The notes beneath the pieces are model-generated. The model was given only the letters and a program-made list of their open reading frames with translations. It searched no databases and was not told the DNA's origin. From Antechinus flavipes (taxonomy: Eukaryota), in contig NC_067401.1 in the NCBI RefSeq assembly GCF_016432865.1, positions 41,292,001 through 41,356,000 on the forward strand: a DNA stretch of 64,000 bases, in the 5' to 3' direction. Each line of letters opens with the position of its first letter. The first letter of the stretch is position 1. Position numbers and translations under genes: made by a program. Positions 3,650 to 13,049 of the stretch are shown in pieces.

Positions 3650-5060
3650 TTAACTCTCGATTTGTCAATAGAAGGGGTTAATCCCCCCCCCCCCTCCTCG
3701 CCCGGCCTCGGGGTCCGCCTTCAGCACCGCCCCCTCTCCCGGGCCCGGACGGGTTTGCCCCGGAGGGGGGCGGCAAGGAGGCGGCCCCGGCCGGAATCTA
3801 GGACCGGACTGAGCTTCCTTGCACGGTGTCCGAACTGCCGGACCCAATCCGAGCGGAGGGGAGCGCGGGAGTGCGGGACCGCAGTTGATTACCCTCTCTG
3901 GCTACCCCACCTTCCGGTCCCACGCCCGGAGCCCCGGGGCCCCCTCCCCCATCCCTAGAGCCGGAGCTGGTAAGTCCCGCCCCCAGCACCAAACTTTTTG
4001 CTCCAAGGTTTCGGGTCCTCGGCCGGACCCTGAACAAGAACTTGGAGGTGGGGGTGGATGGGGAAAAGGGGGGCACAGTAGAACTCACGGCGGGCAAGTC
4101 CAGGAGTTCAGAGCCCCCCAAGGCAGAGCCGGAGTCTTGCAGACCCTACTCCCTAGGATCTCCTGCAGTTCTGGATCGCCCCTGCTATCCGGACTCTGAG
4201 AATCTGTGACTCCTTCACTGCTTCCGTGTCCCCAGCCCCGACTGAGTGCCCGCGGAGCCCCTCATCTCAGGGTCCGGTGTGTCCCTGAGTCCGAACGCCC
4301 CGTCCACTTTCCCTCCAGCATTCTGCCCCCGCAGGCACTCGCGGATGCCCCGGGAGGACTGTGTAGTCCCCGAATCTCCCCAGACGGGCTTCGGAGCCCG
4401 CAGCTGCCCCCGCCTTCCCCATCCCCCTCCACGCCAGATGTGCTGCGGCTGCCGCTTCCAATTGTGGGGGAGGGGGAGGAGGCCGAGGCCGTGGCCTGGC
4501 CGGAGTCGAACGGGCGGGGCTGGGAATGGGAGGGGGAGAGGCCAGGAGAGGAGGCCGAACGGGGCGGGGCGGGGCGGGCGATGTTTGCGGCCGGCCCCGG
4601 GGTGGGGAGTTGCGCGCCGGTCCCTGGGCCTGGGCTCCGGCGCCTGCGATGTCTCAAGATGGCGGAGCTGGGCGAGTTAAAGGTACCGGACCCCCGCGGA
4701 GCCTCCCGAGCCCGAGCCTCGCCAGCTCGGGCGGCGGGGAAGCGGGGGGAAAGCGGCAAGGCAGGGATGCGGGAGGCCCGGGGGCCGAGCCCGAGGGCGG
4801 CAGGAGAAGATGCGGGCGCGGGGACACCTGGAGAGGATGGACTTTGGGGGCAGGGACGCGGGGGACGAGGCGGGGGTCCCGGATTCGGGGCGGCGGCGAG
4901 GGCGATGCTCAGGGAGTCGGCGCCGTGGGCAGAACAGGGGCGGGGGCCTCCGGGGGCAGGGATGGAGGGGCAGGGCCCGCGGGGGGCAGGGCCACGGGGG
5001 CGGGGCTGGGGGGAGTCTAGCAGGGGCTCGGACCTTCGGGAGCAGGGGCATAGGGGAGCC
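3650..5060. promoter_or_regulatory. PIAS3: PIAS3 CpG-island promoter
   Basis: Dense CpG; CCAAT at 3844-3848; three tandem GGGCGG Sp1-type boxes at 4561-4578; surrounds coding exon 1. Confidence 0.85.
4659..4682 (+). CDS. PIAS3: PIAS3 coding exon 1
   Basis: MAELGELK; donor GT at 4683. Confidence 0.93.
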
Positions 5061-8000
5061 AGCGCTGTTTGGGCAGGGAGAGCACTAGCCCGGTAATTGG
5101 CATCTACGTAGCACTTTGAAATGGATAAAGCGCTGCAACGTACGTTATCTCTTCGGAGACACCCCACCGCTCCTGGAGGGAGGTTAGTACCGTACATACA
5201 TCGGGTTAGAGGGGAACATCCTCATTTGGAGGGGATGCGGGGAGATGGCTCTGTGGGAGGGCACCGGGAGAAGATGAGGCTGCGGGGAGGGCAGAGATGT
5301 CGGTTTGAGACGGTGGGAGGGCACAGAGTTAGGGTGGGAGAGAGCTGAGCTGGAGGGATGGAACTGGGGGAGGAGGGCAAGGCATAAGATTGTAGGAGTC
5401 CCAGGATTGTAGGGATGAAGCCGTGGAAAGGTACAGAGATGCAGGGAGCTGGCGGTGGGAGGGCACAGGGAGAGAATTGTGGGAGATGGAGGAGAGGTGG
5501 GGATGGGGCTCTAGGAGGGCACAGGAATATCCGGGGGAGGCAGAGCTGGGGGAGACAGCTGTGGGGAACAGGCAGAGGTGTGTGAATGAGATGGGAGAAC
5601 ACGAGGCATCGAGGATTGTAAGAGGGCCGATGTCAGGATGCAAATGTGGGGCTGTGGAGGTAAGAGAGAAATCTACAGGTGACAGAAGAAAGGAGGGGAG
5701 GCTCCATGTAGCGGTGACATGGAAGGGATTGCTTTCGGGGGAAAGGCCGCGAAATTGGCAGCCACATTCCTCAAAGAGCGCCCCGTCGTTAAGCTGTCCT
5801 CTGGTTGGTAGGGGGGAAGGCGGGCAGGAAAGGACAGGAAAGGGAAGCTTCCGAGGTGAAGGATAAAGGATGAGGAGACCCAGCCATTTACTCAGGACTG
5901 GCAGTGTCTCAGCCGAGATTCCCTTGTGGACTTGTCACCCCTTCTGCAGACTGGAAAGGAAAAGGGAACACCACTGATGAAGCACCTACTGGGTGCTGGG
6001 CACTCTGCTAAATGCTTTCCAAATGGTCTGTCCCTTGATGGATCCTTATATTGTCCGGAAGCTGCCCCTTCTCCTTTTGGAATGAAGCAATGTGTGGGGA
6101 CCCATTTTAGGTCTTGTTATGGGTGTCTTTGGTACTCCCTGTCAGGCGATTTCCCATTCCATTCTGCCTAGATGCTATCCCCTCCCTCTTCCTCCTCCAT
6201 CCCTAAGCCTCCTCCTCTCTGGGGGATCAGGTCAGAGCTTTACCATCTGGATCTCAGCAGGGGAGAGGAGCCACTCCTCCTTTCTTCAGGAATCGCTCCA
6301 GTCCTTCTACCCTTTATTAAAGGAAGGTCCCAGTTTATGTCAAATGAAGTACTCTGGTCCAAGGGGGAAAGCCAGTTCCTGGCAGCATCCTAGCATTGTG
6401 ATTTTTCTGTGCCCTGTGCTCTGGGCCTTAGTTTTCCTTCCCCCTGAAATGGGGAGATCTTGAGGTAGGGTCATGCTGTTGAAGGTGAAAAGGGATTTGA
6501 AGGGTATTGAAATCTTCCCTAGAAGCCTTGGCCTCCAGGCTTACATGGAATGAGGCATAAGTGGGGGCTGGGATTTACATAGAGATCCTCCAGCCACCTG
6601 GCCCTAGTCTCTCTGTTCCCCTCCCCCCCAGGATCTAACCCCCACTCTTCCTTCCTGTGTTACTTCCCTTTCTCCCTCTTTCCCTCCCTCTCTCCCTCCC
6701 TTCTTCCCTTTCTTCCTTCTCTTCTTCCCCCGCTTCCTTCTTNNNNNNNNNNNNNNNNNNNNNNNNNNNNNNNNNNNNNNNNNNNNNNNNNNNNNNNNNN
6801 NNNNNNNNNNNNNNNNNNNNNNNNNNNNNNNNNNNNNNNNNNNNNNNNNNNNNNNNNNNNNNNNNNNNNNNNNNNNNNNNNNNNNNNNNNNNNNNNNNNN
6901 NNNNNNNNNNNNNNNNNNNNNNNNNNNNNNNNNNNNNNNTTCTCTTTCCTTTTCTCCCGCTCTTCCTTCTTTCCCTTCTTCTCTTCTCTTCGCTTTCCTC
7001 CCTTCCTTCCTTCCTTCTTCCCTCCCTCCCTTCCTTCCTTTTTCCTCCCTCCCTTCCCTTTTTTCTTCCTTTCTCCTCCCTTCTTTCTCCCTTCCTTCCT
7101 TTCCCCCCTCCCTCCCTCCCTTCTTCTCTTCCCTTCCTTTCTCTCTCCTTTCCTCCCTCTTTTTCTTCTTTCCTCCCTTTCTTCCATCTTCCCTTCCTTT
7201 TTTCTTCCCTCCCTTCCTTACTTCCTTTTTCCTCCCTCCCTTTCATTTTTCCTTTTTTCCTCTTCCTTCTTTTTTCTCATTCCTTTACCTTATCTCTTAG
7301 AAAGCTGGGGTGGGCCTGGGAATCTAAAAATAAGTAAGAAAGAGGAGAAAGAAATTTTAAGGGGAGGGTTAGGAGCTTTGTGCTGCTGCCTAGTGTTAAG
7401 ATTAGGGAGGGAAGGAGGGAGGTGATGGGGAAGAGGGGAGATTACTGTTCCATTTCCAACTCTGTTTATGCTGGTTTTTCTGTTAGCTACCAAAGGGAAA
7501 GAGGTATGCTTAGGTGGCGGATGTTGGGGGGTGGGTTGGGAGACACCGAATGGGACCTGTTGAAACAGGAATTGGGAAGGACACCAATTGGGGGGGAATT
7601 CCAACCTCTTCTCTTAGAGTTGGGCCATCTCTTTCAGAGGCCCAAGCTATTCCATCTAGTCATGTGAAGTCAAGCTCTCTTTCTCTTTTTTGCTGAGGAA
7701 TTAGGGGTAAGTGACTTGCCCAGGCTCACAGCCAGGAAGTGTTCAGTGTCTGAGGTCACCTTTGAACTCACATCCTCCTGACTTCAGGGCCGGTGCTCTG
7801 TCCACGGGGCGGCCGCCTGTTAAGGGCTCTTCTCAATGATTCCTCAGCAGAAGGGTCTCCTTGGGATGGGCATCCCTCCTTAGCAGGGAGGTCGAGCTGT
7901 GGCTAATCTCAGACTGGGATCCTTGCCCCCAGCTCACCTGTGGCGCCTTCTCTTCCCAGCACATGGTGATGAGTTTCCGGGTGTCTGAGCTCCAGGTGCT

Positions 8001-11000
8001 TCTGGGCTTTGCAGGACGCAACAAGAGTGGGAGGAAACACGAACTACTGACCAAGGCCCTGCAGCTTCTCAAGTCTGGCTGTGGCCCCAGCGTCCAGATG
8101 AAGATCAAAGAACTTTACCGACGCCGCTTCCCCCGGAAGGCCCTCGTCCCTTCGGAGCTCTCACTGCTGTCTTGCCCCCAGGAGCTCCGCCCATCGTTCC
8201 TCCTGGCCCCCTGCCCCCTGCCCCCTCCAGCCTCCTGCCTTCAGGACCCCTCCTGGGGGGGCCCAAACGTGAGGCTGATGTCCATCCTTCCCTGCCCCAG
8301 CCAGTCCACCCTGATGTCACCATGAGGCCGCTACCTTTCTATGACATATACGGGGAACTCATCCGGCCCACCACTCTCGGTACGGAAGCTGCCCTGATCG
8401 CCTCCCCTGTACTTCTCCATTTACATTCCCCTTCTAAATAAGGAACCGAGCTCTTGGTCAGCGGCTCGATGGACTTAAATGCTGGGCCCTGGCAAATCAA
8501 GGCCTAGATTCTCACTAGCTGTACGACTCTGGGCAAGTCACTTAACCCTGTTTGCCTTAACCTACTGGAGCAGGAAATGGCAACCATCTTAGCATCCTTA
8601 CCAAGAAAACCCCGTGGCCAGTGTCACACCTTGGTCCACAGGGTCACACAGAATGGCACAACTGAACCTCAGCGTCCCAAAGCACCACTGGTTCTCAGGC
8701 AGGGGAGGCTTGCTTCCTTGGGGGGGGGACACCTACCTGCACAAGTAACTGTGTCTCTCTTCTCTGTGTACCTAGCATCCACAAACAGCCAGAGGTTTGA
8801 GGAGGCTCATTTCACTTTCGCATTGACGCCACAGCAAGTGCAGCAGATCCTCTCCTCAAGGTACCTGGACCTCCTCCCTCCGAGTCCCTTGTCCTTGGCC
8901 ATGTTTTTGAATCCTGGCCTTTGGGCCTCACATCTTGATCTGATCTGCCTTCTTTGTCTAAATTGGCTTTAGTCACCTTGCCTTCCCATCTGTTGCCCTC
9001 ACCCATCAGTTCTTTCCCATCTCTTTGTCCATCTCTCAGGCTTCTTTCTAGCCCTCTAGATTATCTCCTTCCTGTACCCCACCCTCTCAAATCTCTCCTT
9101 CTCTTTGTTTTAGGGATGTCCTGCCTGGGGCCAAGTGCGACTATACAGTACAGGTCCAGCTCAGGTGAGACATCTCCCAGAAGACACCCTTCTCACTGGG
9201 AAACACTGGTCCATGTCCCCTCTGAGTGGTGGTGGTGATGGTTTATAAACAGGAATTACAAAGGACCCAGAGAAATTTTGAAAATTCGATCTCCCGTGCT
9301 TGAAGTCTCAAAGCAGCTTTTCTTGTTTGCTATGAGACACACGCAACTTGATTTATCACAAAATAAATAGTCGTGCTATATGTAGAGTGGCTTTTTCTAA
9401 TGTCAAAAATATATCCATTTCAAAAAGTATAATTATAATGTTCCTCATTGTATTATCCATCTCAGATGTTGCTTGCCCATCGTCTAGGCCTTTTGTCAGG
9501 AGATTTTCATTCTTTGGAGGTAGATAATTCTTACATTTGGGGTGAAGGAAGTTTCTCTCTTGAATTTTGTAGGCAAGAAATATGTTTTATTCCTGGATTT
9601 GGCCCTTAATTTTTACCTATGTCTGCAGACTCACAGCTACAGGAGCTAGAACTCTGGACAGTAACTTCCTGTACCTTCTCTCCCCCTCCCCAAATCTTTC
9701 ATCAGGTTCTGTCTCTGTGAGACCAGTTGCCCCCAGGAAGATTATTTTCCTCCTAACCTCTTTGTCAAGGTTAATGGGAAACTGTGTCCCCTGCCGGTGA
9801 GTGACCCCTTCCCAGCCCCTTTCCCCACAACTTGTCCCGACAACATCCCCTTCCCAGGTGGTCCCCTTTTCCAAAGAGTCCCATCCCTACATCCTCATTC
9901 TTTCTGAATATTCTAAATGGGAATATTCTCCCAAAGGGGGTACGTATAACACTAGCCTCCCAAGGTCAAGTTTTGCATAAGATATGTGCAAACTCTGAAT
10001 TGCAGCCCCGAGACCAGGGCTGCTTCTGCCCTGACCTTCCCCATTTCTCTAGGGTTATCTTCCCCCGACCAAGAATGGGGCTGAACCCAAAAGACCCAGC
10101 CGACCTATCAACATCACATCCTTAGTCCGACTTTCAGCCACTGTCCCCAATACTATTGTGGTCAACTGGTCGTCTGAGTTTGGACGGGTGAGCTGGGGGT
10201 CTGGGGGTGAGCCGCGTGCGGGGGAAAAGCGGAGGGAGCCTGGGCCGTGTGGTGTCCGACGGGTGTTTCAGGGGAGGGGGATCGTTCGCAGACCCCCCTG
10301 CCACTGGGGAGTAAGTGACACAGTAACGGGGAACAGATGCTGACATTCTCCCCAGAATTATTCGCTGTCGGTGTACCTAGTGAGGCAGCTGACCTCAGTG
10401 ACGCTGCTGCAGAAACTGAGAGCAAAGGGCATCCGCAACCCAGACCACTCTCGGGCACTGAGTAAGTTCTCTCGCTGATCCCCGACCTTTCCTGGGGTCC
10501 CTTGCCCACCCAGCCCCGTTCCGTGCCTGCCCTCGCCGGCCCGACTCCCTCATCTTGGTTCTGATCTCGTTTCAGTCAAGGAGAAGCTGACCGCCGACCC
10601 TGACAGTGAGGTGGCCACCACCAGCCTGCGGGTGTCACTCATGTGCCCGGTGGGTACGGGAGGGGGAGACCCGAGATGGGCCCGGGGTGGGGGGCGGAGA
10701 AGGCCGAGCTGACTCCCGGATAAGGTGTCCCAGAAAGGGGAAGGTGGGCAGAGGAAACACGCTGAGAAGCCCTGCTTTTCCCCAGTTAGGGAAGATGCGC
10801 CTGGCTGTGCCGTGCCGGGCCCTCACCTGTGCCCACCTACAGAGCTTCGACGCTGCCCTCTACCTGCAGATGAACGAGAAGAAGCCCACGTGGACGTGCC
10901 CTGTGTGTGACAAGAAGGCTCCCTACGAATCCCTGGTCATAGATGGGTACGGCCACGTCCGCTCCCACTTGTCCAGGACGCCCAGATAAACCCCCTTCTT

Positions 11001-13049
11001 TCCCTTGACACGGAGAGCCTGGGCACTGATGGGTCTGGACACCCCGGCCCAGCCAGACTCCCCCCGGAGATCTCTCGTTTCTGCCCCAGTAGCCCTCCGC
11101 AGGTAGTCCACGTCCTGAATGCCCGCTTTTCTGTCGCCCCAGGCTGATGGGCTTTCTCCACCAACCACATCCCCTGATCTCCTCCTGCCTCCCCCCATGA
11201 CCTCCTCCTTCCTTCTCCCAGATTGTTCATGGAGATTCTGAATTCGTGCACTGACTGTGATGAGATCCAGTTCATGGAAGATGGATCCTGGTGCCCAATG
11301 AGGCCCAAGAAGGAGCCACCGGAGGTTTGCCCCACAACAGGCTATGGCTTAGATGGTGAGTAATGGGATGATTCCCTGCTCATTCCCAAACGTGGTGAGG
11401 GGTCAGATGGTATCAGACCATTTCTCCCTCCGGTTAGTGATTCCCATCCTTCCACTATCTCCAGGTCCCCCCTTTGGCCCTGGCCCTGAGGGCAAGCCTC
11501 CCGAGACCAAGAAGAAAATCGAAGTTATTGACTTGACACTTGACAGCTCTTCAGATGAGGAAGACCTGCCCCCTCCTAAGAAGCACTGCCCAGTCACCTC
11601 GGCGGCCATCCCTGGTCCCCCTGGAGGCAAAGGGTATAAAGAACTGGGTTGAGAAAGAAGTTGGGGTTTAGAGCAAGAAGTCCTCCCAAGATCACTGGGG
11701 ACGTGTGGGGATGAGGGGAAGAAGGGAGGATATGTCAGCTTTTCCGTGTAGTGGTTAGGGGTCGGGGCTGGATGGGAAACCAGAGGAGGGGGGGGATTTA
11801 GGGAGACTTCCGAGGAGCTGACAGCTTCCTCTCTTCTTATAGAGTACTGGCTACCAGTCACCAGCCATCATCTGTGCTCCGGAGCCCAGCTATGGGCACC
11901 CTGGGCAGTGACTTCCTATCCGGCCTCCCTCTTCCCGAGTACCCACCAGCCTTTCCACTGGGGGCCGAAATCCAGGGTATGACCTCGTTCCAAATATGGC
12001 TCCCTCCAAAAGAAACCCCCCTGCCCTTTTTTGCTGCGGGATTAGGTAACGATCCTTGTATGTCCTGCCCCTCCAATATCTCTAACTTCCCAGGGAATTC
12101 CCACATCTGGGGAAGTTTTAGGTAGCAGAATCGGGCTGATTTTCTTTTTCCCATTTTCTCACAGGTTTGGACTTATTTACTTTCTTTCAGAATGAGAGTC
12201 AGGTAAGAATTCCTTCCCTTTCCACCACAGTGTCCAGTCTCTGTAGCTTCGTATAGGTTTGTTTCTAACTCTTACAAGGGCTCTTTTTAACTCTCGTTGC
12301 TGTGGGATGAGATTGAGGGGATGGGCAGACAGTTGATTTCCTTTCGAAGGGACAGAATTTGATTTTAGGGCTAGAAAAGATTCCTCAGTGTACAGATTAG
12401 GAAACTGAGGCTCAGAAGGTCATGTGGCTGGCGAGGCTGGACCCAGAAGCTAGCTATCCCAAAGCCCTTGGTCCCAGAGTTCTTTCCATGGCCCCACCCC
12501 CCCACGTAGCAGGTCACACCCTTCTCGTGCCCAGACATTCCATGCATTCTGAACGCCCACAGCGTTGGAGGAGGCCGGAGGCGGTGGGATGTCTCTAGCT
12601 GGGGATAAATGCTTTCCCGCTCATGGTGAGCCCGTCTTTTCAGAGAAAAACCCTCGAGTGGATTAGACAGCCTTCTCTGGGATCTCTATAAGTGTGGAGG
12701 GAGTATGTGGGAAGTGTCTGAGGGGTGGGAGGTTGGGGAAAAACGAAAGTCTTAGCTATTCTCTCCCCCGATTCCCCCTCAGCACTACAGTCCTTCGGTC
12801 ATCACCTCAATAGACGAGCAGGATACCCTTGGCCATTTCTTCCAGTACCGGGGCACCCCTTCCCACTTCTTGGGTCCACTGGCTCCCGTTCTGGGGAGCT
12901 CTCACCGAGGATCTCCTCCAGCACCGCCTCCTGGCCGGGTCAGCAGCATTGTGGCCCCCGGAGGGGCCCTGAGAGATGGACACGGGGGACCCCTGCCTCC
13001 AGGGTCTTCTCTGACCGGTTGTCGGCCGGACATTATTTCCCTGGACTGA
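4659..13049 (+). CDS. PIAS3: E3 SUMO ligase PIAS3, 14 coding exons, with a 1-nt frameshift in exon 2 in this sequence
   Basis: join(4659-4682,7960-8379,8776-8860,9114-9164,9706-9796,10053-10187,10356-10461,10576-10649,10786-10946,11222-11355,11465-11633,11843-11976,12165-12202,12783-13049) = 1889 nt (1890 nt, 629 aa, if one base is restored near 8172). All introns GT-AG. Recognisable SAP domain, PINIT region (PNTIV), SP-RING, SIM (IEVIDLT) and C-terminus DIISLD*. Confidence 0.96.
6640..7300. repeat. Polypyrimidine (C/T) low-complexity tract spanning an assembly gap (N 6743-6939)
   Basis: Nearly pure CCTT/CTCC/CTTT-type sequence on both sides of 197 Ns. Confidence 0.95.
7688..7825 (-). mobile_element. 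Short marsupial tRNA/CORE SINE (WSINE1-like)
   Basis: T tail, aagtgacttgcccagg, tttgaactc...tcctcctgacttcagggccggtgctctgtcca. Confidence 0.8.
7960..8379 (+). CDS. PIAS3: PIAS3 exon 2 (SAP domain; frameshift near 8172)
   Basis: [26 protein letters not shown]...ELSLLS, then a frame switch to PPGAPP...[10 protein letters not shown]. 420 nt where 421 are needed. Confidence 0.93.
8776..8860 (+). CDS. PIAS3: PIAS3 exon 3
   Basis: [27 protein letters not shown]; AG/GT flanks. Confidence 0.95.
9114..9164 (+). CDS. PIAS3: PIAS3 exon 4
   Basis: [16 protein letters not shown]; AG/GT flanks. Confidence 0.95.
9706..9796 (+). CDS. PIAS3: PIAS3 exon 5
   Basis: [30 protein letters not shown]. Confidence 0.95.
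10053..10187 (+). CDS. PIAS3: PIAS3 exon 6 (PINIT region)
   Basis: [45 protein letters not shown]. Confidence 0.95.
10356..10461 (+). CDS. PIAS3: PIAS3 exon 7
   Basis: [35 protein letters not shown]. Confidence 0.95.
10576..10649 (+). CDS. PIAS3: PIAS3 exon 8
   Basis: [24 protein letters not shown]. Confidence 0.95.
10786..10946 (+). CDS. PIAS3: PIAS3 exon 9 (SP-RING)
   Basis: [53 protein letters not shown]. Confidence 0.96.
11222..11355 (+). CDS. PIAS3: PIAS3 exon 10
   Basis: [44 protein letters not shown]. Confidence 0.95.
11465..11633 (+). CDS. PIAS3: PIAS3 exon 11 (SIM and acidic tract)
   Basis: [27 protein letters not shown]. Confidence 0.94.
11843..11976 (+). CDS. PIAS3: PIAS3 exon 12
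   Basis: [44 protein letters not shown]. Confidence 0.94.
12165..12202 (+). CDS. PIAS3: PIAS3 exon 13
   Basis: [12 protein letters not shown]; 38 nt, donor GTAAGA. Confidence 0.92.
12783..13049 (+). CDS. PIAS3: PIAS3 exon 14 (terminal)
   Basis: [24 protein letters not shown]...[10 protein letters not shown]. Confidence 0.95.
   Translation, partial: HYSPSVITSIDEQDTLGHFFQYRGTPSHFLGPLAPVLGSSHRGSPPAPPPGRVSSIVAPGGALRDGHGGPLPPGSSLTGCRPDIISLD

What the first reader, a model, noticed from the sequence alone, without database searches (positions are those of the whole stretch)
8161..8325. PIAS3 exon 2 lacks one base: frameshift in an otherwise intact gene
The sequence reads TCA CTG CTG TCT TG CCC CCA where the orthologue pattern (SLLS-LPPG) needs TCT xTG CCC. 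Exon 2 is 420 nt but exon 3 requires phase 1 (421 nt). As written, the product is 129 aa (SAP domain plus a novel tail) ending at TGA 8323-8325, an NMD substrate. The other 13 exons are intact with no other lesions, which argues for an assembly indel or a very recent allele rather than an old pseudogene. The shifted stop overlaps an in-frame ATG in good context (gtcaccATGA, 8322), so re-initiation could yield a SAP-less PIAS3. The uAUG frame does not rescue it because it stops at 7988.
Basis: partly seen in the sequence, partly recalled or inferred. Interest (0 to 1): 0.72.

Follow-up and report, generated by a model that had tools for sequence, protein, structure and literature searches.

The report
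One-base gap in marsupial PIAS3
The PIAS3 gene of this dasyurid marsupial assembly lacks one base in exon 2, but everything else about the gene looks fully functional, so the gap is most likely a sequencing-assembly error, not a biological loss.

Summary
PIAS3 exon 2 (7960-8379) is 420 nt here and 421 nt in Sarcophilus, Sminthopsis and Dromiciops. The window reads TCT-TG at 8170-8174 where they read (T/A)CTCTG. The missing base is the C that starts the Leu80 codon, not a T in a T run. As written, the frame stops at TGA 8323-8325, giving 129 aa.

The other 13 exons have GT-AG borders and align without gaps to the three marsupials. With the break bridged, both halves of exon 2 translate identically to Sminthopsis PIAS3. 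Downstream of the break, changes private to this lineage are 22 synonymous to 2 non-synonymous. The intact genes of Sarcophilus (17:2) and Sminthopsis (23:2) show the same ratio, so this is not an old pseudogene.

I favour an assembly consensus error at about 0.88. Earlier scan notes name the genome as Antechinus flavipes. That assembly was built from noisy PacBio reads with wtdbg2 and polished once with Pilon. NCBI also flags PIAS3 models as low quality in at least seven other assemblies. A real allele remains possible at about 0.1. Interest is low.

The parts
4659..4682 (+). PIAS3 exon 1 coding part (MAELGELK), with donor GT at 4683. An in-frame upstream ATG at 4581 would add 26 aa.
   Evidence: Identical to Sminthopsis and Dromiciops. 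The 26-aa extension equals the N-terminus of the 655-aa Monodelphis and koala models.
7960..8379 (+). PIAS3 exon 2, 420 nt here and 421 nt in three other marsupials. It encodes the SAP domain, the Pro-rich linker and the start of PINIT.
8170..8174 (+). The break. The window reads TCT-TG where Sminthopsis and Dromiciops read TCTCTG and Sarcophilus reads ACTCTG. One C, the first base of the Leu80 codon, is absent after 8172.
   Evidence: Protein alignment A1 shows SLL(S/T)-L-PPG in all marsupials.
8323..8325 (+). TGA that ends the frame as written. It lies 54 nt before the exon 2 donor and overlaps the conserved frame-B ATG at 8322-8324 (Met of [10 protein letters not shown]).
8776..13049 (+). 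Exons 3-14: 8776-8860, 9114-9164, 9706-9796, 10053-10187, 10356-10461, 10576-10649, 10786-10946, 11222-11355, 11465-11633, 11843-11976, 12165-12202 and 12783-13049, with TGA at 13047-13049. All have GT-AG borders, compatible phases and no internal stops.
   Evidence: borders read by eye; PINIT, zf-MIZ; ungapped match to three marsupials.
6743..6939 (.). A run of 197 N in intron 1, inside a CT-rich low-complexity tract, 1.2 kb upstream of the break. Left as it is.

Best explanation
This is the intact, functional PIAS3 orthologue of a dasyurid marsupial, Antechinus flavipes according to earlier scan notes. PIAS3 is an E3 SUMO ligase and inhibitor of activated STAT3. The assembly's consensus has dropped one base, the C of the Leu80 codon CTG, after 8172. 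The animal most likely makes the normal 629-aa protein, or 655 aa if translation starts at the upstream ATG. The frameshift, the 129-aa product and the nonsense-mediated decay (NMD) scenario would then exist only in the assembly. Shown: the location of the break, that it is the only lesion, and that purifying selection still acts downstream of it. Inferred: that the missing base is an error of the assembly and not a feature of the DNA.
For: (1) It is the only lesion. All 14 exons are colinear and ungapped against Sarcophilus, Sminthopsis and Dromiciops except for this one base. All splice sites are GT-AG with matching phases. The exon lengths sum to 1889 nt, so one more base gives 630 codons. 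That is 629 aa, the length of Sminthopsis PIAS3 X2.
(2) Both halves of exon 2 translate 100% identically to Sminthopsis.
(3) Constraint is not relaxed. Over 542 codons downstream of the break there are 40 synonymous and 4 non-synonymous differences from Sarcophilus, and 46 and 4 from Sminthopsis. Changes private to this lineage are 22:2, against 17:2 and 23:2 in the two intact genes.
(4) The assembly method is prone to this error: PacBio CLR at 100x, wtdbg2, and one Pilon round with 50x of 100-bp reads (PMC9290055).
(5) Base rate. NCBI labels PIAS3 models 'LOW QUALITY PROTEIN' in at least seven other assemblies. Earlier notes list several other single-base frameshifts in conserved genes of this genome (unverified leads).
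Against: The site is not a homopolymer, where residual errors concentrate. Pilon with 50x coverage should usually repair an isolated 1-bp deletion. Its failure here could mean that the reads are mixed, that is, a heterozygous allele. Across 18 kb of clean three-way alignment, the window has no more private 1-bp deletions than Sarcophilus (12 against 14). So there is no independent sign that this stretch is poorly polished. The paper reports high heterozygosity in A. flavipes.
Confidence: 0.88

Rival explanations
1. A real but very young one-base deletion allele of PIAS3, carried by the sequenced male and probably heterozygous. The assembler happened to pick that haplotype. Its transcript would be an NMD target and a null or near-null allele.
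For: The sequence as given. The site is not a homopolymer, and short-read polishing did not change it. Heterozygosity is reported to be high in this species. The 22:2 pattern only limits the age of the lesion to a few per cent of the branch, and a segregating allele fits within that.
Against: Frameshift alleles in a gene this strongly constrained are rare. By my estimate from general knowledge, they are much rarer than residual indels in a once-polished CLR assembly. No reads or second individual could be examined.
Confidence: 0.09
2. A real frameshift with a functional outcome. Termination at TGA 8323-8325 is followed by re-initiation at the overlapping ATG 8322-8324, giving a PIAS3 without its SAP domain.
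For: The ATGA overlap exists, with A at -3. This Met is conserved and sits at the start of the PINIT region.
Against: By established knowledge, re-initiation after an upstream frame of 129 codons is very inefficient in mammals. The SAP exon part is still under the same constraint (6 synonymous and 0 non-synonymous differences from Sminthopsis). This explanation also requires the allele to be real in the first place.
Confidence: 0.02
3. PIAS3 is an old unitary pseudogene in this lineage.
For: Only the frameshift itself.
Against: There is no second lesion in 1.9 kb of coding sequence, and all splice sites are intact. Private changes are 22 synonymous to 2 non-synonymous, equal to the intact relatives. 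Neutral drift would give roughly three non-synonymous changes per synonymous one.
Confidence: 0.01

Closest known systems
PIAS3 of other marsupials (Sminthopsis crassicaudata XP_074119388.1, Sarcophilus harrisii XP_031823276.1, Dromiciops, Gracilinanus)
   Same: Same 14-exon structure, with 95-100% nucleotide identity per exon to the two dasyurids (Sarcophilus, Sminthopsis) and 89-100% to Dromiciops. Same neighbours: an Ank-repeat gene upstream, then NUDT17 and POLR3C downstream. Same predicted length of 629 aa once the break is bridged.
   Different: One base fewer in exon 2, 420 nt against 421 nt.
RefSeq 'LOW QUALITY PROTEIN' PIAS3 models (koala, Camelus ferus, several birds and frogs)
   Same: Otherwise normal PIAS3 genes whose assemblies carry a frameshift or stop that the annotators treat as an assembly fault.
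   Different: I could not see how the public annotation treats this genome's own PIAS3, because only 15 of the 39 cluster members are listed.
Residual indel errors in long-read assemblies
   Same: A single-base deletion breaks a conserved gene in a CLR/wtdbg2 assembly polished once with short reads. The problem in general is described in 10.1101/2021.07.16.452324 and PMC12007338. I saw only the titles and abstracts of those two papers.
   Different: The site is not a homopolymer, and there is no wider excess of private 1-bp deletions in the surrounding 18 kb.

Membership tests
PIAS3 orthologue (E3 SUMO-protein ligase PIAS3) | SAP, PINIT and SP-RING (zf-MIZ) domains in that order | tested here: met
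   Pfam PF02037, PF14324 and PF02891 on separate exons. PDB 1v66 and 4mvt matches.
PIAS3 orthologue (E3 SUMO-protein ligase PIAS3) | Exon-by-exon colinearity with annotated marsupial PIAS3, and shared neighbours | tested here: met
PIAS3 orthologue (E3 SUMO-protein ligase PIAS3) | Uninterrupted reading frame | tested here: not met
   As written, the frame ends at 8323-8325. One base is absent after 8172.
Unitary pseudogene | Several lesions and relaxed constraint (non-synonymous changes approaching the neutral share) | tested here: not met
   One lesion only. Private changes are 22 synonymous to 2 non-synonymous, as in intact relatives.
Assembly consensus indel | Raw reads of the same animal carry the base that the consensus lacks | not testable with these tools
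Assembly consensus indel | Assembly method known to leave such errors | tested here: met
   PacBio CLR, wtdbg2, one Pilon round (PMC9290055). The genome's identity rests on earlier notes, which I did not verify.
Assembly consensus indel | Local excess of lineage-private 1-bp deletions over a well-assembled sister genome | tested here: inconclusive
   16 against 5 in the PIAS3 region without filtering, but 12 against 14 over 18 kb with clean flanks.

The most novel reading that the evidence does not exclude
The reference male carries a genuine, very recent loss-of-function allele of PIAS3, the inhibitor of activated STAT3. He belongs to a semelparous dasyurid, a family noted for male die-off after mating and for high cancer rates. 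The allele might give a SAP-less protein by re-initiation at the overlapping ATG.
Probability: 0.1. Interest if true: 0.45.

Novelty: not a real feature. Interest (0 to 1): 0.1.

Why it matters
If the gap is an artefact, as is likely, its only importance is practical. Gene models and loss-of-function screens on this assembly will wrongly report PIAS3 as broken, and the site is a candidate for correction. If it is real, it would be a natural null allele of a STAT3 and SUMO-pathway regulator in a wild marsupial. Even then it would be a property of one animal or population, not of the lineage, because the gene shows no relaxation of constraint.

Tried and rejected
- **Reads.** I used only local reading, alignment and scripts, plus proteins and loci already returned by the databases.
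- **Motif script.** I read the exon borders by coordinates instead.
- **Word searches.** Searches with exon-sized queries found no dasyurid exon-2 product, intact or truncated, so they say nothing either way.
- **Marsupial PIAS3.** I reached these proteins only through a shark fragment used as query and its cluster.
- **This genome's own public model.** It could not be seen, because only 15 of the 39 cluster members are listed.
- **Sminthopsis isoform X2.** It is not on record as a gene product. The longest isoform worked.
- **Private 1-bp deletions.** Counting them as a gauge of local assembly quality gave an apparent excess that disappeared with filtering and more sequence.
- **Other private indels.** The three I checked in NUDT17 and the 3' part of POLR3C (14453, 20189, 22302) did not look coding. 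The first two sit just upstream of what I read by eye as splice acceptors, and I did not map those genes' exons. So I found no second coding frameshift.
- **Literature.** No paper in the library links PIAS3 with marsupials.
- I did not build or search a joined spliced model. All work was done exon by exon.
- **Human material.** I took no contig for human, and I did not fetch or use the primate PIAS3 cluster listed.

Full report
**What is in the window**

The + strand from 4659 to 13049 carries a 14-exon gene.
- Its exons encode a SAP domain (7960-8172), a PINIT domain and an SP-RING/zf-MIZ finger (Pfam).
- The N-terminal piece matches the solved PIAS1 SAP domain (1v66, E 2e-26).
- The end of exon 2 matches solved human PIAS3 (4mvt, E 2e-15).
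- The neighbours in two dasyurid genomes are the same: an ankyrin-repeat gene upstream, then NUDT17 and POLR3C downstream on the other strand.

The gene is the PIAS3 orthologue. Earlier notes of this scan call the genome Antechinus flavipes. I did not verify that. The exons are 95-100% identical to both Sarcophilus and Sminthopsis yet distinct from each, which fits a third dasyurid.

**The observation**

- Exon 1 ends in phase 0 (ATG 4659, donor GT 4683).
- Exon 2 starts at 7960 after an AG and ends at 8379 before a GT, so it is 420 nt.
- In the exon 1 frame it reads through the SAP domain to ...SELSLLS (TCT 8170-8172). It then reads 50 unrelated codons and stops at TGA 8323-8325.
- The +1 frame from TTG 8172-8174 reads LPPGAPPIV...[22 protein letters not shown], which is the conserved continuation.
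- The two frames overlap by one base, so exactly one base is missing and its place is fixed to within a base or two.
ATG 8322-8324 overlaps the TGA. The upstream ATG at 4649 reads the +1 frame of exon 2 but stops at TGA 7986-7988.

**Comparison with relatives**

Word searches gave exon-2 products of many eutherians, and all read S(D/E)LSLLSLPPG. A third search reached a 39-member marsupial PIAS3 cluster. From it I fetched the genomic loci of Sarcophilus harrisii, Sminthopsis crassicaudata and Dromiciops gliroides.
- Every one of the window's 14 exons aligns to them without a gap, except exon 2, which is 421 nt in all three.
- At the site the window has TCT-TG, Sminthopsis and Dromiciops have TCTCTG, and Sarcophilus has ACTCTG.
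- The absent base is therefore a C, the first base of the Leu80 codon.
- The two halves of exon 2 translate 100% identically to Sminthopsis. The 'M' shown there for the first TTG only reflects the translation table.
- The extra glycine in LLGGPKRE (G run at 8254-8260) is shared by all marsupials and is not a second problem.

**Rest of the gene**

I read all borders by eye; the coordinates are listed under parts. All are GT-AG and the phases fit. The exon lengths sum to 1889 nt. One more base gives 630 codons, that is 629 aa, the length of Sminthopsis isoform X2. I checked this arithmetically and exon by exon. I did not build or search a joined spliced sequence.

**Age of the lesion**

Downstream of the break, 542 whole codons can be compared.
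- Against Sarcophilus, 40 codons differ synonymously and 4 non-synonymously. Against Sminthopsis the counts are 46 and 4.
- Codons changed only in the window, where the two other dasyurids agree, number 22 synonymous and 2 non-synonymous. The same count gives 17:2 for Sarcophilus and 23:2 for Sminthopsis, whose genes are intact.
- Neutral drift would give roughly three non-synonymous changes per synonymous one (general knowledge).
The branch is no older than the 4-22 Ma calibration quoted in PMC9290055.

An old pseudogene is excluded.

**Error or allele**

The indirect evidence is as follows.
- *Assembly method.* If the genome is the published A. flavipes assembly, it was made from PacBio CLR reads with wtdbg2. 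It was polished once with Pilon using 50x of 100-bp reads (PMC9290055). That recipe is known to leave single-base indels that break genes. The general background is in 10.1101/2021.07.16.452324 and PMC12007338, of which I saw only titles and abstracts.
- *Base rate in other assemblies.* Among the PIAS3 entries returned, NCBI marks at least seven as 'LOW QUALITY PROTEIN' (koala, Camelus ferus, two birds, three frogs). Such lesions in this gene are commonly treated as artefacts.
- *Other notes on this genome.* They list more single-base frameshifts in conserved genes. These are unverified leads.
- *Rarity of real alleles.* A real frameshift allele in a gene under this much constraint is rare. 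By my own rough estimate from general knowledge, it is one to two orders of magnitude less likely than a residual consensus error in 1.9 kb of coding sequence.

Several points count against a confident call.
- The site is not a homopolymer.
- Pilon normally repairs an isolated deletion at 50x.
- The species is reported to be highly heterozygous.
- My attempt to show that this stretch is poorly polished failed. Window-private 1-bp deletions outnumber those of Sarcophilus in the PIAS3 region in a raw count (16 against 5). They do not over 18 kb with a clean-flank filter (12 against 14).
- The three other private indels that I looked at inside neighbouring genes (14453 in NUDT17; 20189 and 22302 in POLR3C) did not look coding. 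The first two lie just upstream of what I read by eye as splice acceptors, and I did not map those genes' exons.

**Verdict**

- The most likely explanation is a one-base consensus deletion in the assembly (about 0.88), so the feature is probably not real.
- A genuine young allele stays at about 0.1. The re-initiation idea stays at about 0.02, and it applies only if the allele is real.
- No literature in the library connects PIAS3 with marsupials.
- Interest is low.

Noticed in passing
window 4581-4682: An in-frame ATG at 4581, with no stop before the usual start at 4659, would add 26 aa (MFAAGPGVGSCAPVPGPGLRRLRCLK). The extension is identical to the N-terminus of the 655-aa PIAS3 models of Monodelphis and koala. 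If it is used, the product as written would be 155 aa, not 129.
   Followed up: partly
window 4560-4686: The 5' leader and exon 1 are 100% identical over about 127 nt between this window, Sminthopsis and Dromiciops, far more conserved than the coding exons. The stretch includes the out-of-frame upstream ATG at 4649. That ATG overlaps the main start and would read about 21 codons to TGA 7986-7988 in exon 2.
   Followed up: partly
window 6640-7300: A long CT-rich low-complexity tract in intron 1 encloses the 197-N run at 6743-6939. I left it untouched and cannot tell whether it is an assembly gap or a masked stretch. If it is a gap, exon 2 lies only 1.2 kb from a contig end.
   Followed up: no
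window 8254-8260: A run of seven G encodes Gly-Gly in LLGGPKRE. All marsupials examined share the extra Gly compared with eutherian LLGPKRE, so the run is read correctly.
   Followed up: yes
window 14453 and 20189: Window-private 1-bp deletions lie just upstream of what I read by eye as splice acceptors of NUDT17 and POLR3C (minus strand). They appear not to be coding. Whether they are real or assembly errors is unknown.
   Followed up: partly
L005 16234-23010 (Sminthopsis): The Sminthopsis annotation has a 770-aa PIAS3 isoform X1. It also has a 381-aa minus-strand gene whose range overlaps the 3' half of PIAS3. Sarcophilus has a 310-aa NUDIX gene (NUDT17) that stays clear of PIAS3.
   Followed up: no
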